Assembly (NCBI GenBank): GCA_002269645.1
Contig: NIVC01000719.1
Span: 398,243 to 462,242 of the forward strand
Source: Macrostomum lignano
Lineage: Eukaryota
DNA: 64,000 bases
Direction: 5' to 3'
The notes beneath the pieces were generated by a model. It was not told where the DNA came from and searched no databases. It saw only the letters and a program-made list of their open reading frames with translations. Below are positions 18,901 through 60,637 of the stretch, one piece after another (position 1 is the stretch's first letter; every line of letters starts with the position of its first letter). A program made the position numbers and the translations under genes.

Positions 18901-21900
18901 ACCATGAGGCGATTGAGTGCCTGCGGCGCTTAAATGAGTGCCTGCGGCGCTTAAATGAGTGCTTGCGGCGCTAAAATGAGTGCCTGCGGCGCTAAAATGA
19001 GTGCCTGCGGCGCTAAAAGTGGCAATGGCATGAGGCATGGCCAGCCAGGCCAACCCGCCCCCCCCCAATTAAAATTCCTGGCTACGTCGATCACTGAGTG
19101 GATTTGTGGAGACTACAGATGAATTTCTTTCTTTGGTTTTTTGTTTCTAAGAACTAAACAAAATATTTTTATTAACTTAAAAACGAAAAGCAAAAATATT
19201 TTACCGAAAATAACAAAGTAAAAACATGTTTCAAGTATTTCTTTATTAATTACAGCGTAATACCGTATGATATTATTCACTTAGTTTTGAATTTAGGAAT
19301 GAAAAATGCTAAAAATGTGACAACTAGAGTAATAGCTAAGCATATCAGTTTTAAATTTAAATATTGCGATTGTTGCAAAGTAACTGTAACGGACTTCCGA
19401 AATTTGAGTAACTTACCGTTACTCCGTTACCAAAATAGGAAAGTAACTTGCGTAAGGAACGCTTTACGAAAAAGTAACTTGCGTTACCATTTACAAGTTA
19501 CTCGGTAACGGAAGTGCCCAACACTGGCCATAGGCACCTATTTTACCATATTTTAAGCTACGGCTATGGCGGAACATTACTTAACTTAGCATATAATTGG
19601 CATAATCCTAATGCATACCGAGGTCATTAATGCATAGGCCTATGTCTATGATATACAACTTTTCAGCATAGGCCTACTTGCCAAAAAACATAGGGTAAAA
19701 CATCATCAACCGGACAATGAATCTTCAAAACCGGACAAGTTCATCAGCTTCTATTTTACTACCATACTTGACAATAACAAACTTAAAAGCTTAACTTAAC
19801 CACTCGTTTGAAAGAACTTGTAACTATCTGCAAAACGACACATCCATCGTTTGATAGTTTTCTGTAGAAAAAAAGATATTTGTGTTTATCTGATGAAAAA
19901 ATTGTGAAATTTACGTTTTGCGAAGATTTTTGTTTTTCAGCGGCTACTGAAAAAATGTTTATAACTTTACAATCGCGGCTCCGTTTTTTATACCCAATGT
20001 CTCATTTTATTCAGCATAAAATGATCTATTGATTGACATTAAATATGTGACTTAAATTTGCTGGTAACTTTCACATTTAGCCCTGTCCGGTTGATGATGC
20101 AATTCTGTCCATTCGGTTCGGTTTACAGATTCGTGCACCATCAACCGGACAAAGAATCATCAACCGGACGGGTAAAAAATGCAGGCAATAAAAAGTTTTT
20201 AGCTAGTAAAATAAACAGAATATATGTTTTGCTTTCACCTAAATTACAAATCAAAGCAATTTTATAAGTTGTTGTCAAAAAAACAATAACCATTTTGTTT
20301 TACGTATTTGAGCTTTGAACACCGGATTTTCAGACTTTGATTTGTAAATCTCCGGTAAAAATAACAGTCAAATATTTTATTCTCTACTTACAGTAGTAAA
20401 GCAAAGGTTGACGAAATATCAACTATTTTCGGACAATTCAGTGTCAAAAAGTGGCGGACTCCATTGTGTGACTGCGCTAACTCTACGGAATAAATAGGCA
20501 TAGCTTATTTTAACTAGCTACATTACCGCGCTAACTTTAGTACTGCGGCCAGTAACTCTATCTGCATTCGGCGCCAGAGATGTACATGTATTCAGCAGGT
20601 AGATGTGGTAAATGGCTTTGAAAAGCCTAATGGTGCTTGAATAGTTTGGTGCGGGCTAAAGCCAAAACAGAATAATTAAACAAACATGATGGGTGTCCGC
20701 GAGCTTGCCACCCCAAACAGCGCCCCCCTCGGCGCCACTAAAATGTTCGCCGTTACAAAGCAGCGCCAGTGCCTTCTAGTAAGCATGTAAATGTGGCATT
20801 CCATGCCCTTTATCACCCCCAGCGTGGCGCCCCAAGCATGGTGCAGGGCGCACCTACGTACCAAAAGAATCTTATTGGTATAGATTGCCAATAAGCTCCA
20901 TCGTATTTCAAGAACCACTAGGAGTATAAGGAGTCTACTTCTAGCGGTTTTTATAACTTACGACCGAATAAGCTCAATGAAAGCTTCACAAAAAGGCGCA
21001 AAGAAACTGAAACCAATCACAACGAAAAGAATTTTATACAAGCAAGTTAATCTAAGAAAAACACATTTACTTTCTGTTTGATATCTCACATGCAAGAATC
21101 TATAATTGTTTGCTTATAATTAACTACTGTACTCCCATAGGTAAAGTCGAGATATTTATTGGGTTGCGCGCTGGGAAGTCGCGCTTCTAAGGGACGCTAA
21201 AAAGACGCCAAAAGGGCGCTAAAGCGTGTGCTCTAAAAAGCGGGTGTCTTGTGTTCTGGGCTAGCTTCGGGAGCGCTTATTGGGGGGGGGGACGATTCGG
21301 TACGATGTGGCGCTATGAGGGCGCTTTGGTAGGGCGCGGTCGGGGCAAGGCAGCTTTAAGGTCACTAGCTGGGTTGTAGGGCGCTTTGGGAGAGCTTTAC
21401 CCCTTCAAAAGAATCTCCACTTGCCCAGCCCCTGGCTTCGCACCTGCTCTGCTTCTTCCAAACAATACACCGAACTCAAGGGTGGCGGATCCAAAGGAGC
21501 AAGGCTGAGCGGTGGGCTGTTTCCAGAATTTTCCTCAAATTTGCTCATCACAATTTTTTCAGGTGTCTATAAGCTACTGCGGAAAGTGGACGGCCACCCC
21601 ACAGCGGTTGCGCAAATGGTTTTTAGATAAATTGAGGATCTGTAAAATATAGCTCGCGCCTCTGTAAAAATCGAAGGCATTTAGGCAGCCACTAGTCTAG
21701 CTATTTAATAGCTATTGAATAGTCATTAGTAATAGCTAGTATTGATTGCAGTAAGGCAAAATTGAAACCACCAGTATACGCGTGAAGCCGTTTTATTGAC
21801 GCATTCTATATATACCATGCATGCCATTCATCCATGATTATACCGCCACCCCTGTTGGATCTCATCCAGCTAGGGTGGAATCCGGTGGATGAATCAAAGC

Positions 21901-24900
21901 ATTGAGACAAGTAATATAGAGGCCAACTCAATTTTCCAGTTTCAGTTGAATTCGCACATTACTGGCGGCTGACCCCTAAATGGCGACTAATGCTTTGCTT
22001 GCCGACATGTTGCATTCATGAGATAGAGATGGGATGGCTGTTTGTGAAAGTGTGAAAATGGGCAAAATTTGTGAGAATTATGCAATCATAGGCTGAATTG
22101 ACTCTGTCTATATGACACTGTCTACCTCTGTCTCTCTAGTATATGAGAATTATAAGCTTACCCTGTCATTCAGGATGGGTTTTTCTATATTTTGCATTAG
22201 GCAAATTATTCACTCTTTACTTTCTGAATTTTGGATTATAAATAATAAAACAAACAACTCTATTAATGATATCCCAAAGAAAAGGCAGCATATAGCAACA
22301 ACACATGCACTAAAGTGTATTGACCACAAAACAACGGGTTTGTTGTGTATGTACATATACATGTAAATATTCAAGTAAAAGTTTTTCTGCAAATGCATAT
22401 CAAGTCAGCCATAAAATTCCGTACTGAAAAGTTTTCCAGTATAAAATAGACCTTGCATTGTGGAACCCATTTCCACTCTGGGGTGCCAATGTTTGTGTGC
22501 TGCTCAGCTTTTTTGGCGCCACTTCCCCACTTGGCACTCATCCTGTATGCTCATCCTGTGTGCTCATTCTGTGTGCTCATTCTGTGTGCTCATTCTGTGC
22601 GCTCATTCTGTGTGCTCATTCTGTGTGCTCATTCTGTGTGCTCATTCTGTGTGCTCATTCTGTGTGCTCATTCTGTGTGCTCATTCTGTGTGCTCATTCT
22701 GTGTGCACACTCTGTGCGCATTCTGTGTGCTCATTCTGTGTGCTCATTCTGTGCGCTCATTCTGTGTGCTCATTCTGTGTGCTCATTCTGTGTGCTCATT
22801 CTGTGTGCTCATTCTGTGTGCTCATTCTGTGTGCACACTCTGTGCGCATTCTGTGTGCTCATTCTGTGTGCTCATTCTGTGCGCTCATTCTGTGTGCTCA
22901 TTCTGTGCGCTCATTCTGTGCGCTCATTCTGTGTGCTCATTCTATGTGCTCATTCTGTGCGCTCATTCTGTGCGCTCATTCTGTGTGCTCATTCTGTGTG
23001 CACACTCTGTGCGCATTCTGTGTGCTCATTCTGTGTGCTCATTCTGTGCGCTCATTCTGTGTGCTCATTCTGTGCGCTCATTCTGTGTGCTCATTCTGTG
23101 TGCTCATTCTGTGTGCACACTCTGTGCGCATTCTGTGTGCTCATTCTGTGTGCTCATTCTGTGCGCTCATTCTGTGTGCTCATTCTGTGCGCTCATTCTG
23201 TGCGCTCATTCTGTGTGCTCATTCTGTGCGCTCATTCTGTGCGCTCATTCTGTGTGCTCATTCTGTGCGCTCATTCTGTGTGCTCATTCTGTGCGCTCAT
23301 TCTGTGTGCACACTCTGTGCGCATTCTGTGTGCTCATTCTGTGTGCTCATTCTGTGTGCACACTCTGTGCGCATTCTGTGTGCTCATTCTGTGTGCTCAT
23401 TCTGTGCTCAAATGTTAAAACTACACTCATTGAAATAATTTCTCGGCTCCATCTCTGTTCGTCTGTTTCTGTATTTTGACTCATTATCTTTGTCTTGACC
23501 CGTTTCTCCCAGTTTCCCCGCCTCATCCGGTTTCAACTGACTTTATCCCCATGATTTCTTCTAGACTCAATAGGGCCTATCAGATTCGCAAAATAGTTTA
23601 GTCTTTTCCTTCTCTCAGAATTTCGAGACGGATGATCTCAAGGGACGAAAAGGGAACAATAAGGCCCTACTGCCAATGACAAGCACCAGCGTCTTACTAT
23701 TGGCTAGCACTGGGTCGCACATTATACTTGCGACCTATCCACGAGTTTGGATGAACTCCCAATCCCATTTTTAACCTGTTGTGGAAAAAAACAGCTTGCC
23801 ATCGCCATTTTCATAACCCATAATCAACTCTTTTGGTTCTGATAATAAGAAATACCAACTAAAGCGTATATTCAAATTAACTAGGCCTAATTAACAGCTT
23901 GCCAACAATGGCAAAACCACAGCAATCAAAAGGCAAAAAGCCGGATTTGGAATCCGCAGTTCAAAGTGTGCTGCAACGTATTCGGAGTGGGTTAGACGGT
24001 GACTACCGCAATGTTGCCGATTCTTTCGGCGTTTCAAGATCGACACTGTTTGATCGCGTTCGAAAATTAATGAATGGCGAAAAGCCAAGAAAAAGAAATG
24101 ACTGTAAGCGCTACTTTACAGAGGCAGAAGAACGCCTTTTTTCTGACGCCATACAGCAGGCGGCCGTGCAGCAGCTTCCAGTTTCGAGAAAGTTGCTGCT
24201 GCAAATGGCGTCGGATGCTGTCTGCAATTTCGCCAGCAAGGAAGGCAGGAGCGGCTTGCGCCATGTCCAGGCAAGAATATTTATAAATAAATTTTATTGA
24301 AAAGAGCGAGATCTCAAATCTGCTTTTACCCTTACGGTAATAGGACAGCAATAATAGGACCGCTGTCTGACCCAGTTCTCCCGCTGCCTGACCCAGTTCT
24401 CCCGCTGCCTGACCCAGTTCTCCCGCTGCCTGACCCAGTTCTCCCGCTGCCTGACCCAGTTCTCCCGCTGCCTGACCCAGTTCTCCCGCTGCCTGACCCA
24501 GTTCTCCCGCTGCCTGACCCAGTTCTCCCGCTGCCTGACCCAGTTCTCCCGCTGCCTTGCCTAGTTTTCCCGCTGCCTGACCCAGTTCTCCCGCTGCCTG
24601 ACCCAGTTCTCCCGCTGCCTTGCCTAGTTTTCCCGCTGCCTGACCCAGTTCCCCTCCGGTTCCCCTCCGGTTCCCCTCCGGTTCCCCTCCGGTTCCCCTC
24701 CGGTTCCCCTCCGGTTCCCCTCCGGTTCCCCTCCGGTTCCCCTCCGGTTCCCCTCCGGTTCCCCTCCGGTTCCCCTCCGGTTCCCCTCCGGTTCCCCTCC
24801 GGTTCCCCTCCGGTTCCCCTCCGGTTCCCCTCCGGTTCCCCTCCGGTTCCCCTCCGGTTCCCCTCCGGTTCCCCTCCGGTTCCCCTCCGGTTCCCCTCCG

Positions 24901-27900
24901 GTTCCCCTCCGGTTCCCCTCCGGTTCCCCTCCGGTTCCCCTCCGGTTCCCCTCCGGTTCCCCTCCGGTTCCCCTCCGGTTCCCCTCCGGTTCTCCTCCGG
25001 TTCCCCTCCGGTTCCCCTCCGGTTCCCCTCCGGTTCCCCTCCGGTTCCTCTCGTATTGCATTTAGTATTTAGTATTGCAATAATTTTAATAATTTTAGTA
25101 TTGCATTGTATTTGTCCTTTTGAGTTATTATTCATTTTCCTATTCCCAGGCTGACACTGTGACGCGAGGCTGGGTTGACAGCTTTCTTAAAAGACATCCA
25201 GAGCTTGCGTTGCGTATTCCTCAGGCTGTGAATCCTGGTCGGACAGTCGTCACAGAGGTCAGAATCCGCAACTGGTTTGAGGCGCTCGCTGCGTTTGAGA
25301 TGGATGAGCTACTTGACGGAGCGCTGCAGGATCCTGAGAGAATTTTTAACTGTGACGAAATCGCTGTTCCTCAGGGAATAAAGTCGCAAGCCGTTTTAGC
25401 ACCGAAAGGAATGCTTAATGTCGTTCAAAAGGTACATGGCAGTGATCGAAAGTTTACAACCGTTCTAGTCGCTGTTCAATGCGCAGGAAAGCTTCTGCCG
25501 CCTCGATTCGTTTTTCCTGGAAAAATTCAGCAGCGAACAGACCACTTGCCGCCGGACTGCCACTACAGTTTTTCGCCGAACGGCTGGATGACTACCTCTG
25601 GATTCGAGACTTTCATCCGCGAGACGTTTGTTCCATTTCTTGATGAAGAGAAAGTGCGCCGCCCGGTGGTTCTGTTTACGGATCTTCACGAATCTCGACT
25701 ATCTGTTGAGCTGCTGGAATATCTGCGTGAACAGAAGGTGGTTCTCTATGGGCTAGTTCCAAACGCGACGCACGTTATGCAGCCGCTCGACCTTGCCGTT
25801 TTTCGCCCAGTCAAGTGCGGGTGGCGAGAACTTCTTGCTGACAGATCACAGCAGGCTGCATTCGGCGGCAGCATCAGTCGGCAGCAGTTTGTGCACTTAT
25901 TTCGCGACGTGCTTCAACGAAAGGCAAACGCGTGCAACATTGCGGCTGGTTTCCGAAAGAGCGGAATATTTCCAAGAAATCCGGACGCACCACCATACGA
26001 CAAGTTACTAAAGAGAGTCGACATATCAAAAAGCGGTGGTGTCACGCCGAACAACGAGCTATCATCTGGCAACGAGGAGCAGCTGAAAACGACTCCTAAA
26101 GCAGAAAAAACTTGTCAGACTGTTAGTGGATCAGTGGAGCAGTGCTTTGAGCGAGTTTTCGGCACAGAAAAGCTGTTTCAGCTGCAAACTCAGCCGCCTG
26201 TCTCTGCAGAAGATCGAAGGCTTCAGCAACTTTTCTGGCTGCTGTCAGGCAACGTAAGGGCGGACAGGCCATGTGATAACCACATCGCAAGCTCTGGTGA
26301 CACAGTGGAGAGCCTTCTGGGAAGCCTGCCGTCTTCGCCGTCTCCCGGCAGCAGCCCGCCGCCTCGCGACAGCAGCCCGGCGCCTCTCGGCAGCAGCCCG
26401 CCGCCTCGCGACAGCAGCCCGGCGCCTCCCGGCAGCAGCCCGCCGCCTCGCGACAGCAGCCCGGCGCCTCCCAGCAGCAGCCCGGCGCCTCCCGGCAGCA
26501 GCCCGCCGCCTCGCGACAGCAGCCCGGCGCCTCCCGGCAGCAGCCCGCCGCCTCGCGACAGCAGCCCGGCGCCTCCCGGCAGCAGCCCGCCGCCTCGCGA
26601 CAGCAGCCCGCCGCCTCGCGACAGCAGCCTGGCGCCTCCCGGCAGCAGCCCGCCGCCTCGCGACAGCAGCCCGGCGCCTCCCGGCAGCAGCCCGCCGCCT
26701 CGCGACAGCAGCCCGCCGCCTCGCGACAGCAGCCCGCCGCCTCGCGACAGCAGCCCGGCGCCTCCCGGCAGCAGCCCGCCGCCTCGCGACAGCAGCCCGA
26801 CGCCTCCCGGCAGCAGCCCGCCGCCTCGCGACAGCAGCCCGGCGCCTCCCGGCAGCAGCCCGCCGCCTCGCGACAGCAGCCCGCCGCCTCGCGACAGCAG
26901 CCCGGCGCCTCCCGGCAGCAGCCCGGCGCCTCCCGGCAGCAGCCCGCCGCCTCGCGACAGCAGCCCGCCGCCTCGCGACAGCAGCCCGGCGCCTCCCGGC
27001 AGCAGCCCGGCGCCTCCCGGCAGCAGCCCGGCGTCTGACTGTTTCACTGAGGCCACAATCGCAATGTGTGATTCAGATGTGGATTCTGAGCCACCCTCAG
27101 GTAAGAATTTTTATTAAATTTCTTCTGCCTGGCTTTGCTTCGGACATAGACGGGTTTTTATTGGTAGAGCTTCTTACGCTCGTAGCTTTGTCTAATCGCG
27201 TGTATTTAAAGGCTCATAATCCGACTTAACATTCTGTCATGAGAAGGGAACTGCGAGCAGATTCCCCCTGAAATAATCTGCTTACTTTTATTACAAGACT
27301 AGAATTTTAGCAAAGATCTTTTCCCTCAGAGCTGTCCGCGGCTGGGACTCGTGGGTCATTGAGTGCACTCCTGCTTTATTTATGTAATTGACTCACTCGT
27401 ACGTATTATGCCTAAAGACAGCTTCAAACAGCCTTAAAGACTGTCGCAGATTTTTTCGGGCAATGATATTCGTATTGGAGTAAGCAAATCTTAATTAGAG
27501 CTAGATGTTTGCTCTTCCTAATTCAACAGATTCGTTCTGTCCTGTCGAATCTATCTCAGCTGCGGCGGCGGCTGCAGTTTCTTCTTTCGTTCTACCTGTG
27601 AACAGAAAGAGGAAGGCAGCAGAGGAGGCCTCAAGTTCGAAAAGAGGCAAATCGACTTGCCAGGACCTGCCGGACTCCAACCTCACAAGCCTGTCAACGC
27701 TGTCCTTTTTACGCAACAAGGCCAACAACCGGCGAGCACTGGCTGATGCCAAGAAGATGCGTGTAGCGAAACGTCAGCTCAACGCGCAGAAAAAAAATAC
27801 CAAATGGGCAACCCAGCAGAAAAAAATTGCTGAGCGAATGAAAGCCGGTGAATCTGCAAAGCAGGTCTCTCAAAGTGCATACACCGCTAAATTGAAGGCA

Positions 27901-30900
27901 AAAGCAAGTTCCTTGGATTGCATCCTCGGCCAAACAAAATCCTTTGGCGACTGCTTTTTTGAGTCAATCGCTCAGTTGCTGCAGAACGAAGGTTCTGACG
28001 CCGATCATATGCAGCTTCGTCAGCAGTCTTGTGACTACCTGGTTGAAAATCCAGTAATCTGCGGAACGGTCTTGACCGATTTCATCGAAGGCAATGACTT
28101 CGAGAACTACATCAGCAGAATGCGCCGCTCGGGCACGTACGCCGATCACGTCGCAATAATCGGCACTGCCAATTCGCTAGGCCGAGCCATTCATATTTAT
28201 CAACCCGATAAGCCAGCGCCGGTCAAAATTACAGCTGCCAGTGCAAAGCAGATGAAATCGCCACTCAAGATCGCCCACATTCCTGAGCTGCATTATCAAC
28301 CGCTTTTGCCAAATCCAAGTGCTCTGCTAGAGAATTCGACCCCAGTGCCTCTTTGCGCAGGGGACTGGGCCCTTGTCGCCGTGAAGGCCGAATTGCGCAA
28401 CAAAGCCACCTGGAAATTTTTTCCATCCCGCATCGAGCAACTCGACAGCGAACAAGCCGTAGTTTCGGCCTGCGCCATGTCCGTCTCGGAATGGATCGCA
28501 CGGGGGAGACGGCGGCCGTTTGTCTTCCCGGTCGAGGAAGATTTATTCTCCGTTCACGTGAGTGAGCTGGCCCGATTGCCAGAACCGGCTGCCGCAGCAG
28601 GACGAGCACACGGATGGCAATGGACGCTCACTGAGCTCATGGCAGCGAGAAATAAGATAAAAACTGACTAGCTTGTAGTTGACTTTTGGCTAGGCCTAAT
28701 CAGTCCGCTAGCCTTACTTTTCGCTCGACTTTTCTCTCCGCTCCCCTCTTCGTCTTAAGTGCTTAAAATTTGCACATTTTACATCGATTTGCAATTACTG
28801 TATATGATGCTCAGTCAATTTTTGGATCGTTTCATGCTTTGCCTACTACATTAGTAACTGATCTGGTCTTTTATAATAATAACTCGTGTATTTATAGTTC
28901 GTTTTAATGTTTTCTGTATTGCTGCTCGCATTTATCACTGTCCTATCATTTCTGAATCATTAAATTATGTCAACTTCCGTTGCTTTTCGCATAATTGGGT
29001 TAAATATTGTACGAGCAGTAGAGTATTGCTAACTTAATTTTTATTGATTCGAAAGAAATTAGGGGTTAACACCTCACGCACTCGCATACTCTATACACTA
29101 TAAGAGCTATAGTTGTATAGGTCCTAGTCTCCGCTTTGATCGTTATTGCATCGCTCGTGTTTTAATCAATTCGATCAATGTGTTTTGTAATGTAATAAAT
29201 TAGTAAATATAAAACCAAATAAAAGTAAAGAAATGCTTTTTCTCGTCTAATTCAGCTGTTGCTTGCCTTTAATTAACAGTTCCAATTAAATAAGTTTATG
29301 AGCAGAATCTCTTTTGAAAAGAGATTCTTTCGTTGATATCGAGTTAAATGCAGTGCACAGAAAGGAAAGTAGGGCCTATATATCAGTAATATCATTTATC
29401 AGGCGGGGAGGAGAGGGGAGACAAGGGGCAGGAGAGGAGACAAGGGGCAGGAGAGGAGACAAGGGGCAGGAGAGGAGACAAGGGGCAGGAGAGGAGACAA
29501 GGGGCAGGAGAGGAGGGGGGACAGTTTTGAAGGATGAAATTTAATTTAAAAAATTTAGTGATCGTACGAAACAAAAAACATGAAGATATCTGAGAGCACC
29601 AAAATAAGCTGCAGGGCGCTAAAAGGAGCCGCAGGCGCCGAAATAAGCTGCAGGGCGCTAAAAAGAGCCGCAGGCGCCGAAATAAGCTGCAGGGCGCTAA
29701 AAAGAGCCGCAGGGCGCTAAAAAGAGCCGCAGGGCGCTAAAAAGAGCCGCAGGCGCCGAAATAAGCTGCAGGGCGCTAAAAAGAGCCGCAGGGCGCTAAA
29801 AAGAGCCGCAGGGCGCTAAAAAGAGCCGCAGGCGCCGAAATAAGCTGCAGGGCGCTAAAAAGAGCCGCAGGGCGCCGAAATAAGCTGCAGGGCGCTAAAA
29901 AGAGCCGCAGGCGCCGAAATAAGCTGCAGGGCGCTAAAAAGAGCCGCAGGGCGCTAAAATAAGCTGCAGGGCGCCGAAATAAGCTGCAGGGCGCTAAAAA
30001 GAGCCGCAGGCGCCAAAATAAGCTGCAGGGTGCTAAAAAGAGCCGCAGGCGCCAAAAAAAGCTGCAGGGCGCTAAAAAGAGCCGCAGGCGCCGAAATAAG
30101 CTGCAGGGCGCTAAAAAGAGCCGCAGGGCGCCGAAATAAGCTGCAGGGCGCTAAAAAGAGCCGCAGGGCGCCAAAATAGGCTGCAGGGCGCTAAAAAGAG
30201 CCGCAGGGCGCTAAAAAGAGCCGCAGGGCGCTAAAAAGAGCCGCAGGGCGCCAAAATAAGCTGCAGGGCGCCAAAAAGAGCCGCAGGGCGCTAAAAAGAG
30301 CCGCAGGGCGCCAAAATAGGCTGCAGGGCGCTAAAAAGAGCCACAGGGCGCTAAAAAGAGCCGCAGGGCGCCAAAATAAGCTGCAGGGCGCCAAAAAGAG
30401 CCGCAGGGCGTCAAAATGAGTACTATAGGGCGCCTCTATGGCGCTTCTATAAAGTTCCTTCTATGGCGCTCGCGCACAAGGCGCCTCCCAAAGTGGGCCC
30501 CAAAAGGGTTCCCCAAAATAGCGCCTCTTTGTGGCGCCCCCCCCCCAATTCTTAGCCTCATTCTTCCCGAATTAAGCAAATGTCTTGATCCGCCACTGGA
30601 CAGGACATGTAATCGTACAAACAGAATTTTAATCCTGCATGCTAAGCTCTGCAATGCGCAGAGTCCCCAATCGAGAAGCTTGCTTTAATTGCACACCGTA
30701 ATATATAGCCCTACCGCCCCTACACCCTGCTGAGTTTCTAGAAGTTGGAATGGGCGAATGGCTCAGTGCCATCTGAGCGGGATATAATTGACCAAATCGC
30801 TGCCCTCTTTGCATGCTTGCGAAAACGGTTGATTTCCTGGTGTGAATTAAAGTTTGAGCTTAGCTGTAAGGGGCTATCTGTATGCGCGATTCGCACATTG

Positions 30901-33900
30901 ATTGCGCAATGACTATTGTATAGCTTTTGGCTCACTGAATTGGCAGGCGGTTATCGATAACCATTATATAAACAACAGGGTAGAATCAATTTTTGTTGAC
31001 AATATGGTTCAGCGTTTTGCACCTCCTTACGGAGCAGAAAACCGTCGGATTCCCACGTCTCACATCATGCACTCAACCTCGCTGTGGTTATGCTTTTCGC
31101 GGGATAAAAATCGTCTTTCTTCACACCTCACTTTACCCCGATTGAACTTGTCAAAAAAGTCAAAGTTGAACTCTGCACGCTCTTTTTTGTGCGAGTATAT
31201 CAGTCCCCACAGCAACGCTTGTGTAAATACAGAAAAGCATCCAATGCATCCAATGCAGGCTTGCATCATTGAGGCACCGCCTCTTGTAGGCCATTCTGGT
31301 TATCGCTCTTTCTCACTTGTCCTTACCCCTCTCATCATCGACCTGATCAGGACGAAGTAAATAAATACCTAGCAACCGGGTTTTAAGCAAAAAAAGAATT
31401 TTCCACTTAAAATACATATTTAAAAGGCGTCAATGATCAACCAGTTGCATGCAATACATTTTAGAGATGTATAAAAAATCAGTTTGCGGGGAGATAGGGT
31501 TGATTGGCATAAGGTCGAGCAAGGAGACATGCATGCAGGAAAGGGAAGATAGGCAGGCAGAGGGAGAAACGCAAGCTGTCTGCGAGATGGGAAGCAAGAG
31601 CTAACACCCTCTGCTTACTAGGGCTCTTCTGCTCACTACTCCCCCTCTTCTGCTCAGCGCGTTTGGAGCCTGAACCATGGGCTGCTGCGTGGTACCTCGA
31701 AAAAAGTCAAGAGCGTGATTAAGAGGATAAAGACGTGAGAGACGGGAGAGCAAGAAAAATTTCCCCCTCTTCCTGCCTCTGCTCACCGCTCTCCCCCTCC
31801 TGCTCACGCTCCTGCTCACGTGCCGTCCTCTCTATTCCTTCTCTCCTACATGAGCAACGGCCAAACTTGAGTTTCAGTCTCTGGACTAGACTCCCATTCT
31901 CATAGGAGCCATCGGCTTCTGCCAGTTGAGGAGGTCACTTAAGCAAAACCGGAGGGACAAACTGCCTTCGGGCCTTTTCGAATCGGCCCAAATCAATCGA
32001 AAATCCCATCCCCACCCCAACTCCCTCACTATGACAATCAAAGAGCCATTCCAAGTGCGCATCCAATCAGTGAAGACCAGTTTTGAATCGACCGATTTCT
32101 ACTGGATAGTTCATTCCTATTCGTTCTCACGTTTTTGCTCAACCTCAAGTTGAATGAATATCTTGCGGAGTCCTAACTACATTTAAAGCTAGATCAAGAT
32201 AATATAATAGAATATATCAATAAGCTATATCAAAGGTTTAAAGGATAGGCTAGCCTAGCCAGTAGTTATTCAACAAACCTGCTGACGAAAAGAACTAAAA
32301 CTCCTCGAAATTTCCACACTAAAAGCACTGCAGTGGTCCGCATGGCACGGGACCCCCAAAAGGTAAGCGTCTGTATATTCGGAAATGACTAGGTCCATTT
32401 TTTGCATGTTTGAAATACTCAGCTAGGCTATATAATACACCTTAATGCTATTCCTCGTATTTATAAACGTAGGCCCAATCACTAGCCAGCATAAAAAACA
32501 CAGTCTCTTCTCCATCTCTTCTCCCCAGTCCCCATCTCCTCTACGCTGTTTACTCTCCGCTGGTCTCCTCTCCGCTTGTCTCCTCTCCGCTCGTCTCTTC
32601 TCTGCGTCTCCTCTCCGCCGGCCTCCTCTCCGCGTCTCATCTCCGCCGGTCTCCTCTCCACCGGTCTCCTTTCCGCGTCTCATCTCCGCCGGTCTCTTCT
32701 CCGCGTCTCATCTCCGCCGGTCTCCTCTTCGCTCGTCTCTTCTCCGCGTCTCCTCTCCGCTGGTCTCCTCTCTCTCCGCTGGTCTCCTCTCTCTCCGCTA
32801 GTCTCCTCTCTCTCCGATGGTGTCCTCTTTCTCCTCCGGTCTCCTCTTTCTCCGCTGGTCTCCCTTCTCTCCGCTGGTCTCCTCTCTCTCCGCTGGTCTC
32901 CTCTCTCTCCTCCGGTCTTCTCTCCTCCGGTCTTCTCTCCGCCGGTCTCCTCTTTCTCCTTCAGTCTCATCTCTCTCCGCTGGTCTCCCCTCTCTCCGCT
33001 GGTCTCCTCTTTCTCCTTCAGTCTCATCTCTCTCCGCTGGTCTCCTCTCTCTCCGCTGGTCTCCTCTCTCTCCGCTGGTCTCCTCTCTCTCCGCTGGCCT
33101 CCTCTCTCTCCGCTGGCCTCCTCTCTCTCCGCTGGCCTCCTCTCTCTCCGCTGGTCTCCCCTCTCTCTTCGCTGGTCTCCTCTCCGCCGGTCTCCTCTCT
33201 CTCCTCCGGTCTTCTCTCCGCCGGTCTCCTCTCTCTCCGCTGGTCTCCCCTCTCTCCGCTGGTCTCCTCTCTCTCCGCTGGTCTCCTCTTTCTCCTTCAG
33301 TCTCATCTCTCTCCGCTGGTCTCCCCTCTCTCCGCTGGTCTCCTCTTTCTCCTTCAGTCTCATCTCTCTCCGCTGGTCTCCCCTCTCTCCGCTGGTCTCC
33401 TCTTTCTCCTTCAGTCTCATCTCTCTCCGCTGGTCTCCCCTCTCTCCGCTGGTCTCGTCTCTCTCCGCTGGCCTCCTCTCTCTCCGCTGGCCTCCTCTCT
33501 CTCCGCTGGCCTCCTCTCTCTCCGCTGGTCTCCCCTCTCTCTTCGCTGGTCTCCTCTCCGCCGGTCTCCTCTCTCTCCACTGGTCTCCTCTTTCTTCTCC
33601 GGTCTCCTCTCTCTCCGCTGGTCTCCCCTCTCTCCGCTGGTCTCCTCTCTCTCCGCTGGTCTCCTCTTTCTCCTTCAGTCTCATCTCTCTCCGCTGGTCT
33701 CCCCTCTCTCCGCTGGTCTCCTCTTTCTCCTTCAGTCTCATCTCTCTCCGCTGGTCTCCCCTCTCTCCGCTGGTCTCGTCTCTCTCCGCTGGTCTCCTCT
33801 CTCTCCGCTGGCCTCCTCTCTCTCCGCTGGCCTCCTCTCTCTCCGCTGGTCTCCCCTCTCTCTTCGCTGGTCTCCTCTCCGCCGGTCTCCTCTCTCTCCA

Positions 33901-36181
33901 CTGGTCTCCTCTTTCTTCTCCGGTCTCCTCTCTCTCCGCTGGTCTCCTCTCTCTCCGCTGGTCTCCCCTCTCTCCGCTGGTCTCCTCTCTCTCCGCTGGT
34001 GTCCTCTTTCTTCTCCGGTCTCCTCTCTCTTCGCTGGTCTCCCCTCTCTCTTCGCTGGTCTCCTCTCTCTCCGCTGGTGTCCTCTTTCTTCTCCGGTCTC
34101 CTCTCTCTTCGCTGGTCTCCCCTCTCTCTCCACTGGTCTCCCCTCTCTCCGCTGGTCTCCCCTCTCTCCGCTGGTCTCCTCTCTCTCCGCTGGCCTCCTC
34201 TCTCTCCGCTGGTCTCCTCTCTCTCCGCTGGCCTCCTCTCTCTCCGCTGGTCTCCCCTCTCTCTTCGCTGGTCTCCTCTCCGCCGGTCTCCTCTCTCTCC
34301 ACTGGTCTCCTCTTTCTCCTTCAGTCTCATCTCTCTCCGCTGGTCTCCCCTCTCTCCGCTGGTCTCCCCTCTCTCCGCTGGTCTCCCCTCTCTCCGCTGG
34401 TCTCCTCTCTCTCCGCTGGTGTCCTCTTTCTTCTCCGGTCTCCTCTCTCTTCGCTGGTCTCCCCTCTCTCTTCGCTGGTCTCCTCTCTCTTCGCTGGTCT
34501 CCCCTCTCTCTTCGCTGGTCTCCTCTCTCTTTCCGCTGGCCTCCTCTCTCTCTTCGCTGGTCTCCTCTGTCTCCGCTGGCCTCCTCTCTCTCCGCCGGTC
34601 TCCTCTCCGCCTGCCTCCTCTTGCCAGTCTCCTCTCTCTCTCCGCCCGTCTCCCCTCTCTTCGTCCTTTGTTGCTGTTTCGGCAATCTATCAGCGCCTGT
34701 ACACGCGACCTTGAATAAAAATCCTGGCTGCGCGCCCTACCAGACGTTTCTCTTTCCCCGAGTATCCTTGTTCCGAGTCTGCATAGTCTTATACTCGTAA
34801 CATAAGCAACTCAACGAATGATTACACCGTTAAATTATTAATTAACTTTTTTTAAGTCTCATCAGCAAAATGCTGTTTTACCGATCTTTTCTCCCATATG
34901 TACTTCATTTGATCTTACTAGGGCAAACAAATTTTTAAGTAGGGCCGTTCTCGCGATTTGTGATGATATCTGAAATTAATCAGCGAGTTTTATGTGCTAG
35001 TTAGACTACTTCTTCAGTTAGCAGTAGCATATGAAGAGTTTTACGCACAAACAGAAACTGTTTTTATTTTTTTCTCGACATTTTGCACTATGAAAATCAT
35101 ATTTTTAAATTTTTTAACGACAGAAAGAAACCAGATGGGTTTGTTGCCACTCATCGGAAAGTAACGCTCTATAGGAACATTTTTGTAGGTTTCAAGCAAA
35201 AAACTACTTACAATAAAAATGCTGCCACATGTTAAACAGTACTTTGTAAGCAGACATGCAGTGGAGGGATGTAGATTCATAGCCTAACTGTACCTCCTAT
35301 TACAAAATCAAGGCCAAAATTCATTCAAAACCAACAATGCAGAGGTATGTACATCATTTATATTGTTTACCTCCCCGATTTAGCATGCTTGTTTGGCTAA
35401 AAGCATAGTGTATCCTATGCAGTAGAAAAAACGAACTTTGGACAAAATTTTGGGTAACCTACTTTGAAGAACTAAAATAGGCTCTTTTTCTAAGTCAAAT
35501 TAGATGAAACTGCACACAAATATAGTATAGTAATTTATCTTTCTAGCAACATAAGTTGTAAGTATTATGCCTCAAAATAGAAGCTACTAGTACAATTAAA
35601 ACTTTAAAACCGGACATCGAATGCACCGTCCAGTTTGAAGATACACGTACATCATTGTCCGGTTTTGGATTAAAAACGGCAATAATTTATTTTTTTCTGA
35701 ACCAAAATACTTAAGTCAAAACTTTTTTTAAAGCTGAGAAAGTTTTCTACAACTTTGTTTTTCTTGGGCTTTTATATCTGCGAAATATAATTCACAAATT
35801 CAGTTTTATTTTTTAAAACATGACTTTCTTGTCCGGTTGATGATGTTTTACCCTACATAGGCCTAACTACTTTTTAATCAAACTTGCAGTTTCTTAGGCC
35901 TATTTATTAATAAAAAGATTAAACACTATAAATACTTCTAAAAATTTATTCCATCTCATTACATTATAAAGATAATTTAACTTTAAGTAGGCCTAAGGAA
36001 GTGCCTGCAGCTTAGGTCCTATGGCTATGGGCGACGGCATATTCCTATATATGTTGCCTAAGGCTAATGTAATGCCACTGATATAAGGGCAGTAGTACTT
36101 TCATAATATATAGGCCTTGTGTCACAGAAAGTGCAACTTACCAGGAAAATGGAATTTATTTTTGCAGCCAGTGCAATCCAT
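631..36181 (-). CDS. RNF17: RING + 2 B-box + coiled-coil + >=4 extended Tudor protein (qin/kumo/RNF17-like piRNA-pathway factor); 3' end lies beyond the left edge
   Basis: Exons joined with GT-AG sites and matching phases (minus strand): 36181-36142, 14240-14101, 13897-13773, 13681-13611, 13513-13407, 12520-12201, 11815-10337, 9486-9200, 8396-7626, 5631-5121, 4713-3965, 3442-2891, 919-631. The total of 5441 nt is one base short of 1814 codons, matching one apparent frameshift near 11688. The RING/B-box/Tudor order matches Drosophila Qin and vertebrate RNF17; orthology is inferred from architecture only. Confidence 0.85.
1145..2815. repeat. 22-bp intronic minisatellite with two variants, AAAAGGACCAGAAAGGA(TAGGG/GCCGG)
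   Basis: Tandem periodicity; explains the spurious 623-aa and 569-aa ORFs. Confidence 0.95.
2891..3442 (-). CDS. RNF17: RNF17-like exon, Tudor 4
   Basis: Encodes VFESDGVWCRGRV...FLLDIDTG; donor is AG|gtcagg. Confidence 0.85.
3450..3940. repeat. ~42-bp intronic minisatellite
   Basis: Unit GGAGGGAATGTACATTATCCGATCTGGGGTGGGCGCTGGTCA. Confidence 0.9.
3965..4713 (-). CDS. RNF17: RNF17-like exon, acidic EAE/EPE linker and lead-in to Tudor 4
   Basis: Phase-0 acceptor ccag|GAC and donor CG|gtaagc; the frame is open throughout. Confidence 0.8.
4728..5020. repeat. 21-bp intronic minisatellite
   Basis: Unit GTGAGATGAGAGTTGGTGACA. Confidence 0.9.
5121..5631 (-). CDS. RNF17: RNF17-like exon, C-terminal flank of Tudor 3
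   Basis: Encodes MPPLAVPCRLYGAIPAGGQRW, a typical extended-Tudor flank; donor is |gtgagt. Confidence 0.85.
5660..7572. repeat. Compound intronic minisatellite: 39-bp array (to ~6345) followed by a related 32-bp array
   Basis: Both arrays share the core GATTGAG(A/G)GTGCTCA...TCTATCTA. Confidence 0.9.
7626..8396 (-). CDS. RNF17: RNF17-like exon, Tudor 3
   Basis: Encodes VTSIVNPGLFYI...WYRCRLL...VLLIDSG|; phase 2 joins to EEYNTPANAIF. Confidence 0.85.
8446..9085. repeat. 31-bp intronic minisatellite
   Basis: Unit GCTGCCCTACCTGTATAATACTGACTGGCAG. Confidence 0.95.
9200..9486 (-). CDS. RNF17: RNF17-like exon, Tudor 2
   Basis: Encodes AARYSVDCNWYRGVIESYSPDGISVLFTDYGN; donor is AA|gtgagt. Confidence 0.9.
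9541..10240. repeat. 15-bp intronic minisatellite
   Basis: Unit CCAGCGGGA(C/A)ACACA. Confidence 0.95.
10337..11815 (-). CDS. RNF17: RNF17-like exon, coiled coil + Tudor 1 + start of Tudor 2 (apparent frameshift near 11688)
   Basis: Contains GDWVLSRFQSASDWCRAIV...VFFPDYGN and SPDEFYV. The frame set by the upstream exon stops at TAG 11683-11685, while the downstream frame is open from 11725. Confidence 0.85.
11897..12140. repeat. 25-bp intronic minisatellite
   Basis: Unit TTCAAGCCGCCACCCACCACCCCAC. Confidence 0.9.
12201..12520 (-). CDS. RNF17: RNF17-like exon, B-box 2 and start of coiled coil
   Basis: Encodes CSSAVSH...FCVTCASLICSACQQSSEHADH; donor is AG|gtaaga. Confidence 0.85.
12588..13343. 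repeat. 38-bp intronic minisatellite
   Basis: Unit GACAGTGAGCTGGGTCAGACAGATTGGCTCACTCTGGA. Confidence 0.95.
13407..13897 (-). CDS. RNF17: RNF17-like small exons 3-5 (13897-13773, 13681-13611, 13513-13407), including B-box 1
   Basis: Splice phases are consistent. The last exon encodes CSACKAVQSSVKCAECNDSLFCHSCFRE, continuing as FHNQLGFSH in the next exon. Confidence 0.8.
14101..14240 (-). CDS. RNF17: RNF17-like exon 2, RING core
   Basis: Translates as ILSRNGARHMRLPMVLTCGHNVCTECV...WTCRVDGCQ, with cag| acceptor and |gtacct donor. Confidence 0.85.
16260..16548. mobile_element. hAT-type MITE, copy 1
   Basis: 14-bp TIR (T/C)ATACATGCGCAAC; 8-bp TSD AATCAGCC at 16252-16259 and 16549-16556. Confidence 0.75.
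17031..17300. mobile_element. hAT-type MITE, diverged copy 2 of the same family
   Basis: Co-linear similarity to 16260-16548; 8-bp TSD AGTTTATT at 17023-17030 and 17301-17308. Confidence 0.7.
18245..19526. mobile_element. hAT-type non-autonomous element
   Basis: Perfect 12-bp TIR CAGTGTTGGGCA; exact 8-bp TSD GCCATAGG; dense GTAAC/GTTAC subterminal repeats at both ends. Confidence 0.85.
18785..19097. mobile_element. GC-rich hAT-like MITE nested inside 18245-19526
   Basis: Ends TAGTGGTGTAGCCAGG and CCTGGCTACG..CACTGA; flanks GTGGACTT and GTGGATTT (7/8 match); internal ~21-bp tandem repeat at 18912-19016. Confidence 0.5.
22540..23408. repeat. 13-bp minisatellite inside the pogo element
   Basis: Unit TGTGCTCATTCTG. 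Confidence 0.95.
23908..28671 (+). CDS. Pogo-type transposase fused to an OTU-like cysteine protease, 1151 aa, 3 exons
   Basis: join(23908-24270, 25150-27100, 27530-28671) = 3456 nt, fully open. Domains: HTH (ADSFGVSRSTLFDRV), CENP-B-type HTH (RGWVDSFLKRHPEL), DDD triad (NCDE, FTDLHESR, QPLD), P/S-rich repeat, OTU (GDCFF...ELHY) and a C-terminal barrel-like segment (GDWALV...FVFPVEED). Intron 1 is CAG|gcaaga (GC-AG); intron 2 is G|gtaaga...acag|AT. Confidence 0.85.
24360..25047. repeat. 21-bp then 11-bp arrays in transposase intron 1
   Basis: Units CCCGCTGCCTGACCCAGTTCT and GGTTCCCCTCC. Confidence 0.95.
26340..27030 (+). repeat. In-frame 21-bp coding minisatellite (SSPPPRD / SSPAPPG)
   Basis: The unit length is divisible by 3 and the transposase ORF stays open across the array. 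Confidence 0.9.
29415..30412. repeat. 19-bp array (29415-29515) and ~20-bp GC-rich array (29600-30412) inside the pogo element
   Basis: Units AGGAGAGGAGACAAGGGGC and AGGGCGCTAAAAAGAGCCGC plus variants. Confidence 0.9.
32500..34660. repeat. CT-rich complex minisatellite inside the pogo element
   Basis: Units like CTCCGCTGGTCTCCTCTCT with higher-order variants. Confidence 0.9.
36142..36181 (-). CDS. RNF17: RNF17-like exon 1, first CxxC of the RING
   Basis: ATG GAT TGC ACT GGC TGC ... CCT G|gtaagt gives MDCTGCKNKFHFPG. The phase-1 donor joins the phase-1 acceptor at 14240 and completes the RING. Confidence 0.8.

Positions 36182-37497: not shown

Positions 37498-48138
<10,641 letters not shown>

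Positions 48139-50048: not shown

Positions 50049-60637
<10,589 letters not shown>

What the first reader, a model, noticed from the sequence alone, without database searches (positions are those of the whole stretch)
19693..35853. Giant 16-kb pogo-like DNA transposon with perfect TIRs and an intact spliced transposase
Seen in sequence: the only two copies of the 25-bp TIR face each other 16.2 kb apart. Each is flanked by TA and backed by subterminal AACCGGAC motif clusters. They enclose a complete DDD transposase gene, and the whole unit falls inside one intron of the Tudor gene. Established: Tc1/mariner/pogo elements duplicate TA and are usually only about 1-3 kb. Inference: this is a recently inserted, possibly autonomous, cargo-sized pogo family. 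It stays long (about 11 kb) even after subtracting its satellite arrays.
Basis: partly seen in the sequence, partly recalled or inferred. Interest (0 to 1): 0.9.

Follow-up and report, generated by a model that had tools for sequence, protein, structure and literature searches.

The report
Oversized pogo transposon with transposase–deubiquitinase fusion
A 16-kb jumping gene of the pogo type sits in the first intron of a flatworm RING–B-box–Tudor gene. Its ends and its transposase gene are intact. It is unusual because the transposase is fused to a ubiquitin-removing protease and because the element is three times longer than any pogo element described, although the extra length is non-coding DNA and repeat arrays rather than cargo genes.

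Summary
A perfect 25-bp terminal inverted repeat occurs exactly twice in the window (19693-19717 and 35829-35853). The copies face each other, each is flanked by TA, and each is backed by clusters of an AACCGGAC motif found nowhere else in the window. Between them lies one intact gene. I read it as three exons (23908-24270, 25150-27100, 27530-28671) encoding 1151 aa: an HTH region, a DD35D pogo-type DDE_1 transposase, a 33-copy in-frame 7-aa repeat, an OTU cysteine protease with Cys and His intact, and a conserved C-terminal region.

A homologue from another sample (51% identity) is collinear across both splice junctions. Two further DDE_1+OTU fusions exist in public data.

The "cargo" is not genes. 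5.3 kb of the element is minisatellite, which is no more than the window's background. About 7 kb is anonymous DNA with no Pfam, Rfam or nested-repeat signal.

The placement inside an intron is supported by inference: host exon 1 lies at 36181-36142 and exon 2 at 14240-14101.

No second copy or empty site could be retrieved. The claims of a "family", of "recent" insertion and of movement as a 16-kb unit therefore remain untested.

Verdict: a real, probably autonomous pogo-like element and a new variant of a known kind, of moderate interest.

The parts
19691..19692 (.). Left copy of the TA target-site duplication
   Evidence: Sequence. TA is the longest direct repeat that abuts both ends.
19693..19717 (+). 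Left 25-bp terminal inverted repeat
   Evidence: perfect, one of only two copies in the window.
19693..20181 (+). Left subterminal region. It holds five copies of the (CATC)AACCGGAC(AA) motif: 19708, 19729, 20143 and 20162 on the + strand and 20085 on the - strand. These are putative transposase-binding sites.
22537..23406 (.). 13-nt minisatellite, 68 copies, about 500 bp upstream of the transposase ATG
23908..24270 (+). Transposase exon 1 (121 codons): ATG and first HTH. It ends at a GC donor (CAG|GCAAGA).
   Evidence: The homologue L001 is collinear across the junction. A Pfam HTH_Tnp_Tc5 hit appears only on the spliced product and spans aa 75-142.
24271..25149 (+). Intron 1 (GC-AG, 879 bp). 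79% of it is two minisatellites: a 21-mer at 24360-24651 and an 11-mer at 24648-25052.
25150..27100 (+). Transposase exon 2. It carries the rest of the Tc5-type HTH and the DDE_1 catalytic core (D190, D299, D335; DD35D). It then carries 33 in-frame copies of a 21-nt repeat (26336-27030) encoding SSPPPRD/SSPAPPG. It ends at the donor CAG|GTAAGA in phase 1.
27101..27529 (+). Intron 2 (GT-AG, 429 bp)
   Evidence: The phase matches. L001 is collinear across the junction (FCPVESIS against FSPLESVS).
27530..28671 (+). Transposase exon 3. It carries a basic linker, the OTU cysteine protease domain (Pfam match about 27946-28221; catalytic C913 in GDCFF, H1026 in ELHY) and a conserved C-terminal region of about 100 aa with unknown fold, followed by the stop codon.
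29413..30410 (.). A 19-nt array (29413-29515) and a 20/79-nt array (29599-30410), in or after the 3' UTR
30411..32534 (.). Anonymous non-repetitive interior with no recognisable coding or RNA signal
32535..34636 (.). CT-rich minisatellites of 19 nt and related periods, about 100 copies, 82% matches
   Evidence: It resembles the array at 54351-55244 only at a low-complexity level.
35600..35853 (-). Right subterminal region with three AACCGGAC motifs: 35608 on the + strand, 35657 on the - strand and 35831 on the - strand within the TIR.
35829..35853 (-). Right 25-bp terminal inverted repeat
35854..35855 (.). Right copy of the TA duplication
36142..36181 (-). Host gene coding exon 1 (inferred): caaaATGGATTGCACTGGCTGC...CCTG|gtaagt, encoding MDCTGCKNKFHFP plus 1 nt. 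It supplies the first CxxC of the RING.
14101..14240 (-). Host gene exon 2: the acceptor cag|GC in phase 1, and the rest of the RING finger (CGHNVCTEC...C....C).
   Evidence: Host intron 1 is therefore 14241-36141 and contains the element.

Best explanation
The interval 19693-35853 is a single full-length, potentially autonomous cut-and-paste DNA transposon of the pogo superfamily (IS630/Tc1/mariner group). It inserted at a TA dinucleotide, antisense, 288 bp into intron 1 of a RING-B-box-Tudor (Qin/RNF17-like) gene of a Macrostomum flatworm.

Shown:
- the ends: 25-bp perfect TIRs, a TA duplication and repeated CATCAACCGGACAA-type sites confined to the two subterminal regions;
- one intact three-exon gene of 1151 aa with a Tc5/CENP-B-type HTH region, a DD35D DDE_1 catalytic core and an OTU cysteine-protease domain that keeps its catalytic Cys and His.

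Inferred:
- The HTH region binds the terminal and subterminal AACCGGAC sites. The DDE core excises the element and reinserts it at TA.
- The OTU domain removes ubiquitin (or a ubiquitin-like modifier) from the transposase itself or from host repair or chromatin factors. This would stabilise the transposition machinery, as has been proposed but never tested for the OTU and Ulp1 domains of Ginger1, Helitron and MULE elements.
- The 16-kb length is not gene cargo. One third is minisatellite arrays of the kind that fill this genome's introns, including one array that is translated as a flexible linker. The rest is non-coding DNA. Part of this bulk probably accumulated within the element lineage or in place, rather than being selected payload.
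For: Ends:
- TIR uniqueness and perfection and the TA flanks.
- The motif is confined to the ends, and the two ends share further subterminal repeats.

Gene:
- The gene model is open across two introns with consensus splice sites and matching phases.
- The homologue L001/P0001 is collinear over HTH, DDE, OTU and C-terminus without introns at 51% identity.
- Pfam DDE_1 scores 6e-12 and OTU 9e-11, both above the curated cut-offs. HTH_Tnp_Tc5 is reconstituted across the exon 1/2 junction.
- The catalytic D residues align with invariant columns.
- The OTU domain aligns with human OTUD5 and OTUD3 catalytic domains, including the Cys and His motifs.
- Independent DDE_1+OTU fusions exist: P0071 and P0106.

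Interior and flanks:
- No closer TIR, no nested TIR or LTR pair, and no duplicated segment occurs in the interior.
- No Pfam domain was found in six-frame translations of two of the five non-satellite stretches, 19693-22536 and 30411-32534, which together hold 5.0 kb of the 7.4 kb of non-satellite DNA outside the gene. No Rfam family or tRNA was found.
- The two flanks look alike and unlike the interior. They are AT-rich and have 3.5% tandem repeats on the left flank. CATAGGCCTA lies 15 bp before the left TA and directly after the right TA, and six TAGGCCT(A/T) sites lie within about 540 bp of the reconstructed empty site.
Against: - Only one copy is available, so co-mobilisation of the two ends, the copy number and the age are untested.
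- The TA flanks carry no information about whether the ends belong together.
- The element is three times longer than the documented range for the superfamily (1.2-5.2 kb, PMC7386202).
- A pogo-superfamily element (Passer) loses about 12% activity per added kb (PMC9976928), so a 16-kb unit should move poorly.
- About 7 kb of the interior has no assignable role and could include nested fragments of repeats that cannot be recognised without the rest of the genome.
- Splicing and expression are predicted, not observed.
- OTU activity has not been tested for any transposon.
Confidence: 0.7

Rival explanations
1. The family is ordinary in size and this copy is bloated. A pogo-OTU element of roughly 5-8 kb inserted here and then grew in place through minisatellite birth and expansion, and through nested insertions of other now unrecognisable repeats. 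On this reading 16 kb is a property of this locus, not of a mobile unit.
For: - Tandem arrays make up 32.6% of the element, which is about the window's background. In Macrostomum lignano simple and tandem repeats are 15% of the genome (PMC5730564).
- Several arrays are very homogeneous (99%, 96% and 98% matches), as expected of young arrays.
- The interior has no coding signal.
- Size-dependent loss of activity is known for a pogo-superfamily element (PMC9976928).
Against: - The immediately adjacent host intron (14242-19692) has only 3.5% tandem repeats, so array birth is not uniform at this locus.
- No nested TIR or LTR pair, or duplication, was found in the interior.
- The largest array is already diverged (82% matches), while the TIRs are perfect and the 3.4-kb ORF is intact. 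This fits arrays carried by the element before insertion.
- The related contig L001 also has a minisatellite directly upstream of its ATG.
Confidence: 0.3
2. The two TIRs are ends of two different elements of the same family, each having lost its partner end or never having had one. They enclose host intron DNA plus a transposase gene. The 16-kb interval never moved as a unit.
For: - TA flanks are expected for any end of this family.
- The size is unprecedented for pogo (PMC7386202).
- The left end carries an inward-facing partial TIR copy (16 of 25 nt at 20084-20099). This could be read as the remnant of a short element.
Against: - This reading needs two independent truncations in the correct mutual orientation.
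- No third TIR or stray AACCGGAC motif occurs anywhere in the 15.4 kb between the subterminal regions or in the other 48 kb.
- The partial inner copy lacks the terminal 9 nt, and similar inward-facing sites exist at the right end (35608). It therefore looks like a subterminal binding site.
- The interior differs from the flanks in composition, repeat load and TAGGCCTA content.
Confidence: 0.07
3. It is an assembly chimera. In a repeat-rich neopolyploid genome, collapsed or mis-joined minisatellites may have stitched unrelated segments between two real transposon ends.
For: Macrostomum assemblies are reported as difficult because of repeats and duplicated chromosomes (PMC5730564). Six arrays lie inside the element.
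Against: The gene is coherent across two of the arrays: the splice phases and the reading frame are kept, and it is collinear with L001. Nothing in the window itself signals a join.
Confidence: 0.05

Closest known systems
pogo superfamily transposons (Tigger, pogoR, Passer, Fot, Lemi) of the IS630-Tc1-mariner group
   Same: DDE_1 catalytic domain with a DDD triad (here DD35D), an N-terminal paired HTH of the psq/CENP-B plus Tc5 type, a TA target duplication and short TIRs of 40 bp or less. The nearest named database hits are 'tigger transposable element-derived protein 1-like' at about 30% identity.
   Different: It is 16.2 kb against the 1.2-5.2 kb reported, and the transposase is 1151 aa against 300-977 aa (PMC7386202). 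It has two introns, an in-frame 33-copy minisatellite and a C-terminal OTU protease. The OTU domain is not mentioned in either 2020 survey of pogo diversity. That survey looked only 2 kb either side of the transposase, so elements like this one would have been discarded.
Ginger1 DNA transposons (Bao, Kapitonov and Jurka 2010, PMC2836005)
   Same: A cut-and-paste DDE transposase carrying a C-terminal OTU (or Ulp1) protease, often with 1-4 introns, in invertebrates. In the search with this element's OTU region, five of the 20 hits whose domains I checked were rve-integrase proteins of Ginger1-like build, four of them with a Pfam OTU call.
   Different: Ginger1 uses a Gypsy-type rve integrase with YPYY, zinc-finger and GPY/F motifs, and it measures 2.6-7 kb. 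This element has a DDE_1 pogo core and a TA duplication, so it is an analogous fusion on a different transposase and not a member.
Helitron/Helentron proteins with OTU or VTD deubiquitinase domains; KI-MULEs with Ulp1
   Same: A transposon-encoded ubiquitin or SUMO protease whose role in transposition has been proposed but not tested (PMC2836005, PMC9741609).
   Different: These have rolling-circle RepHel or Mutator transposases, different termini and different target sites.
Uncharacterised DDE_1+OTU proteins P0001 (Logan SRR30276804), P0071 (Logan DRR639055) and P0106 (JGI metagenomes)
   Same: The same architecture. P0001 and its contig L001 are collinear over the whole protein, including the C-terminal region, at 51% identity. 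P0071 and P0106 are 34-36% identical in the DDE core and about 25% in the OTU domain. They share the TDLHxSRL and YGLxPNxTHVMQPLD motifs.
   Different: They are 831-838 aa single ORFs without the repeat linker. No TIRs could be defined for them: the contigs are too short, or all of them come from one locus. An NJ tree groups them with the window protein, but with only 32% bootstrap support.

Membership tests
pogo superfamily (IS630-Tc1-mariner) | DDE_1 (PF03184) RNase-H-like catalytic domain with a D,D,D triad and 29-59 residues between the last two D | tested here: met
   Pfam DDE_1 scores 6.2e-12 at 45.9 bits against a cut-off of 22. D190, D299 and D335 fall in invariant or near-invariant columns of a 10-sequence alignment, with a spacing of 35.
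pogo superfamily (IS630-Tc1-mariner) | N-terminal DNA-binding region with CENP-B_N/psq-type and HTH_Tnp_Tc5 helix-turn-helix motifs | tested here: inconclusive
   HTH_Tnp_Tc5 scores E=6.7e-4 at 20.0 bits, just under the 22.2-bit cut-off, and only on the spliced product. There is no psq hit. The region aligns to homologues that do carry PF03221 and PF05225.
pogo superfamily (IS630-Tc1-mariner) | TA target-site duplication | tested here: met
   TA abuts both TIRs and no longer direct repeat is possible.
pogo superfamily (IS630-Tc1-mariner) | Terminal inverted repeats (type 1, 40 bp or less, in most families) | tested here: met
   A 25-bp perfect TIR.
pogo superfamily (IS630-Tc1-mariner) | Multiple copies at different sites with the same termini, as evidence of mobility | not testable with these tools
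   The host genome is not in any searchable collection. Exact-protein look-ups and the TIR scan found nothing.
Tigger, Passer or pogoR family assignment | Phylogenetic placement among reference transposases | not tested
   No reference set is on hand. DD35D fits Passer and Fot and falls within the Tigger range (PMC7386202). The best named hits are Tigger-like.
OTU deubiquitinases (PF02338) | OTU fold with the catalytic Cys (D-G-x-C-x-F motif) and the C-terminal His (H-Y/F) | tested here: met
   Pfam OTU scores 8.9e-11 at 42.8 bits against a cut-off of 23.3. GDCFF (C913) and ELHY (H1026) align with the Cys and His motifs of OTUD5 (3pfy, E=3.9e-8). Both motifs are kept in P0001 and P0071.
OTU deubiquitinases (PF02338) | Isopeptidase activity on ubiquitin or a ubiquitin-like modifier | not testable with these tools
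   This needs biochemistry. The AlphaFold single-sequence model was unusable (pLDDT 35).
Ginger1 transposons | Gypsy-like rve integrase core with YPYY, H2C2 and GPY/F motifs | tested here: not met
   No rve hit was found. The catalytic core is DDE_1.

The most novel reading that the evidence does not exclude
This element represents an undescribed lineage of pogo transposons that acquired an OTU deubiquitinase once and kept it under selection across distant hosts. In this lineage the protease protects the transposase or the excision-repair step from ubiquitin-dependent host control. The multiple subterminal binding sites allow units of more than 10 kb to be mobilised, which would make it the largest mobile Tc1/mariner/pogo-type element known.
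Probability: 0.2. Interest if true: 0.7.

Novelty: new variant of a known kind. Interest (0 to 1): 0.5.

Why it matters
If the 16-kb unit is mobile, it extends the size range of pogo/Tc1/mariner-type elements about threefold. It would also show that published surveys, which look only 2 kb around the transposase, miss long members.

The fusion of a pogo transposase to an intact OTU protease adds a third independent transposase class carrying this domain, after Ginger1 integrase-type and Helitron RepHel. That strengthens the case that deubiquitination is a recurrent and still untested requirement or advantage for DNA transposition. Because the element appears intact, it offers a simple system in which to test this: one protein, a defined Cys and defined ends.

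The insertion lies 288 bp into the first intron of a Qin/RNF17-like gene, a gene class linked to piRNA-based transposon control in other animals. This may be of local interest for the biology of Macrostomum.

Tried and rejected
- Other copies or an empty site. An exact-protein look-up of the exon-3 ORF and of the Macrostomum Tudor protein P0022 found nothing on record. The 21-nt TIR core gave 0 hits in metagenome contigs. A profile scan of metagenome contigs returned one short unrelated fragment.
- Boundaries of the related DDE_1+OTU gene P0106. Four contigs (L004-L007) proved to be the same locus at 99.9% identity. They gave no boundary information and no TIR.
- TIRs in L001 and L002. The contigs are barely longer than the gene. 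No terminal repeats were found, and the AACCGGAC motif is absent from all the fetched loci.
- Hidden cargo genes. Six-frame Pfam scans of 19693-22536 and 30411-32534 found nothing. The only hit was a sub-threshold VP1-like_C match at E=0.03, which I dismissed. The three shorter non-satellite stretches (23407-23907, 28672-29412, 34637-35853) were not scanned in six frames. The three longest ORFs gave no hit. Rfam and tRNA scans of the whole window were empty.
- A suspected inverted pair of GGCGC-rich segments (about 21.2 kb against 30.5 kb) bracketing the gene. The local alignment scored no better than shuffles. I rejected it.
- Resemblance of the C-terminal ~100 aa to the C-terminus of the Tigger-like P0013, and to chromo or Tudor folds. 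BLASTP gave E=16 and Pfam found nothing at E<=10. I dropped it.
- Structure prediction of OTU plus C-terminus from a single sequence. The mean pLDDT was 35, so I ran no fold search.
- The word-indexed homology search with the OTU exon alone returned nothing, probably because low-complexity words filled the candidate list. The exhaustive HMMER search then found 446 OTU relatives.
- A single origin of the OTU fusion within pogo. The NJ clade was recovered, but with only about 32% bootstrap support, so this is inconclusive.
Full report
**Observation**

The 25-mer GGGTAAAACATCATCAACCGGACAA occurs exactly twice in the 64-kb window, at 19693-19717 (+) and 35829-35853 (-). This holds even when three mismatches are allowed, and no match appears in 100 dinucleotide-preserving shuffles. 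Each copy abuts a TA, so the inverted repeat reads 27/27. TA is also the longest possible direct repeat at the two junctions.

The octamer AACCGGAC occurs eight times against 0.9 expected. Five copies lie within 480 bp of the left end and three within 250 bp of the right end. None lies in the 15.4 kb between them or elsewhere in the window. The two subterminal regions also share CAAAACCGGACAA and AGCTTCTATTTT.

**The gene**

The ORF list shows three pieces on the + strand. I joined them as three exons:
- 23908-24270, ending at CAG|GCAAGA, a GC donor of consensus type;
- 25150-27100, from the acceptor ...TTCCCAG| to the donor CAG|GTAAGA;
- 27530-28671, from the acceptor ...TTCAACAG| to the stop codon.

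The phases match at both junctions. The product is 1151 aa with no internal stop.

Four results support this model:
- Pfam finds DDE_1 in exon 2 (6.2e-12) and OTU in exon 3 (8.9e-11), both above the curated cut-offs.
- An HTH_Tnp_Tc5 match (E=6.7e-4, 20.0 bits, just under the cut-off) appears only on the spliced product and spans the exon 1/2 junction.
- A 3.2-kb contig from an unrelated sequencing run (L001, Logan SRR30276804) encodes a homologue. It is collinear with the whole predicted protein, across both junctions and through to the C-terminus, at 51% identity over the transposase part and 39-47% over the OTU and C-terminal parts. It has no introns.
- The catalytic residues D190, D299 and D335 fall in invariant or near-invariant columns of an alignment with nine pogo/Tigger-like proteins, giving DD35D.

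Between the DDE core and the OTU domain, a 21-nt minisatellite (26336-27030, 33 copies) is read in frame as SSPPPRD/SSPAPPG. L001 has an unrelated proline- and acid-rich linker at this point.

The OTU domain aligns with the catalytic domains of human OTUD5 and OTUD3 (E=3.9e-8 and 2.2e-5). GDCFF lies on the catalytic-Cys motif and ELHY on the His motif. The same motifs are kept in P0001 and P0071. The last ~100 aa are conserved with L001 (47%) but match no Pfam family.

The gene encodes a transposase-deubiquitinase fusion.

**Relatives**

Named relatives of the transposase part are Tigger/pogo-like proteins of insects, Hydra and a mussel, at 27-36% identity.

An exhaustive HMMER search with the OTU and C-terminal part found 446 relatives. 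I checked the domains of 20 of them:
- P0001, P0071 and P0106 are DDE_1+OTU fusions. P0071 also has HTH_psq and HTH_Tnp_Tc5.
- Five are rve-integrase proteins of Ginger1-like build, four of them with a Pfam OTU call (P0085 gave only rve at the cut-off used).
- The rest are cellular multidomain proteins.

P0071 and P0106 are 34-36% identical to the window protein in the DDE core and about 25% in the OTU domain. A neighbour-joining tree puts the four OTU-bearing transposases and a Hydra protein in one clade, but with only about 32% bootstrap support.

OTU or Ulp1 domains fused to transposases are documented for Ginger1, and as accessory domains in Helitrons and MULEs. Their function in transposition is proposed but untested (PMC2836005; PMC9741609). 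Neither of the two 2020 surveys of pogo diversity that I could search mentions an OTU or protease domain.

**The rest of the 16 kb**

The element is 16,161 bp long. That repeat load is not special to the element: arrays cover 38.5% of the rest of the window, and simple and tandem repeats make up 15% of the M. lignano genome (PMC5730564).

Outside the 4.8-kb gene, the non-satellite interior falls into five stretches: 19693-22536, 23407-23907, 28672-29412, 30411-32534 and 34637-35853.
- No Pfam domain was found in six-frame translations of the two largest stretches, 19693-22536 and 30411-32534, which hold 5.0 kb of the 7.4 kb. The three shorter stretches were not scanned this way.
- The whole window has no Rfam family or tRNA.
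- No copy of any interior stretch occurs elsewhere in the window.
- No nested TIR or LTR pair was found.

"Cargo-sized" is therefore true of the length only. I found no cargo.

**Host and setting**

The minus-strand ORFs at 2.8-12.5 kb carry Tudor domains and a B-box. One of them matches a Macrostomum lignano Tudor protein (UniRef A0A1I8F6X1) with long identical stretches, so the window is from that species or a very close relative.

Upstream on the minus strand I found a second B-box exon (13404-13577) and an exon at 14240-14101. The latter starts at an acceptor in phase 1 and encodes the second part of a RING finger but lacks its first CxxC.

The only good candidate for the missing exon is at 36181-36142: caaaATGGATTGCACTGGCTGC...CCTG|GTAAGT. 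It encodes MDCTGCKNKFHFP plus one base, which gives the right phase and supplies the CxxC. In the joined product, RING profiles align from model positions 2-4 onward.

On this reading, host intron 1 is 14241-36141 (21.9 kb, or 5.7 kb without the insertion). The element lies 288 bp from the exon-1 donor, and the transposase gene is antisense to the host gene. The architecture of RING, two B-boxes and several Tudor domains is that of Drosophila Qin and vertebrate RNF17/TDRD4 (from my own knowledge).

**One element or two ends?**

TA flanks cannot decide this, because every end of this family would have them. The following favour a single unit:
- the absence of any third TIR or stray binding motif;
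- the correct mutual orientation of the two ends;
- the transposase gene lying between them with no closer TIR;
- the likeness of the two flanks to each other and not to the interior. The flanks are AT-rich, and the left flank has 3.5% tandem repeats. They also carry a cluster of the palindrome TAGGCCTA, with CATAGGCCTA 15 bp before the left TA and directly after the right TA.

Against a single unit stands only the unprecedented size (1.2-5.2 kb in PMC7386202) and the known fall in activity with length in a pogo-superfamily element (about 12% per kb for Passer, PMC9976928). The size survey extracted only 2 kb on each side of transposase hits, so an element with TIRs 4.2 and 7.2 kb from the gene would have been discarded.

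I put about 0.8 on the interval being one element bounded by these TIRs, and about even odds on whether it moved at roughly this length or grew in place.

**What I could not do**

No other copy, empty site or homeologous locus could be fetched. The related DDE_1+OTU loci gave no termini. Copy number, age, mobility as a 16-kb unit, splicing and OTU activity therefore all remain to be tested. The tests are listed under next steps.

**Verdict**

This is a real and well-formed pogo-superfamily transposon with an intact gene. It is unusual for its length and for a transposase-OTU fusion that I did not find described for this superfamily. It has no gene cargo and is a single observed copy. I class it as a new variant of a known kind, of moderate interest.

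Noticed in passing
window 17418, 19635, 19669, 23882, 28691, 35858, 35895, 35988 (and TAGGCCTT at 36111): The palindromic octamer TAGGCCTA occurs 8 times, always outside the satellites. Six sites, counting the variant at 36111, cluster on the two sides of the transposon insertion point. The two copies inside the element sit 26 bp before the transposase ATG and 20 bp after its stop codon. Its role is unknown; it could be a promoter or terminator motif, or a target-site motif. A literature search for the string gave nothing relevant.
   Followed up: partly
window 1166-13343 (host gene introns) and 24271-25149: Almost every intron of the RING-B-box-Tudor gene is 50-95% filled by its own distinct minisatellite array. 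Examples are 12588-13343, 9542-10244, 8444-9099, 5660-7571 and 3459-3938. Intron 1 of the transposase gene has the same build, with 79% in two arrays. Tandem arrays cover 37% of the window.
   Followed up: partly
window 42311-46831: An intact Ty3/gypsy LTR retrotransposon on the minus strand, with a 1361-aa gag-pol ORF (42562-46647) and 202-bp LTRs that are 100% identical. It is inserted inside a single (CTAA)n microsatellite of about 1.2 kb (41981-42310 and 46831-47685). The apparent 5-bp duplication CTAAC is uninformative within the repeat.
   Followed up: partly
window 26336-27030: A 21-nt minisatellite is translated in frame as 33 copies of SSPPPRD/SSPAPPG within the transposase linker. 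All three forward frames are open across it, and the homologue L001 lacks it. This is a case of a minisatellite tolerated, or used, as coding sequence.
   Followed up: partly
window 37498-38920 and 41569-41976, minus strand: These are ORFs with a weak Mab-21_C match (E=4.5e-4) and with ankyrin repeats, upstream of host exon 1. The two Mab-21-like ORFs overlap in different frames, which suggests an intron or a frameshift. I did not resolve whether they form one gene.
   Followed up: no
window 50049-50585 and 59882-60616, minus strand: These ORFs look like the transmembrane and ligand-binding parts of a Cys-loop ligand-gated ion channel, judged by eye from the translations. They are separated by about 9 kb made up largely of satellites. 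I did not test this against Pfam.
   Followed up: no
L001 1-135: The related pogo-OTU contig from SRR30276804 starts with a 19-20-nt minisatellite (ccgttgcttaa[ct]tacttaa, about 7 copies) directly upstream of its ATG. Its reading frame carries one in-frame stop and one frameshift, so it is a decayed copy or its transcript.
   Followed up: no
L004 7110-15174: Downstream of the metagenomic DDE_1+OTU gene P0176, a 357-bp unit recurs seven times at intervals of 1-1.6 kb with 95-97% identity. Relative to L004, L005 has an extra 498 bp upstream of the gene.
   Followed up: no
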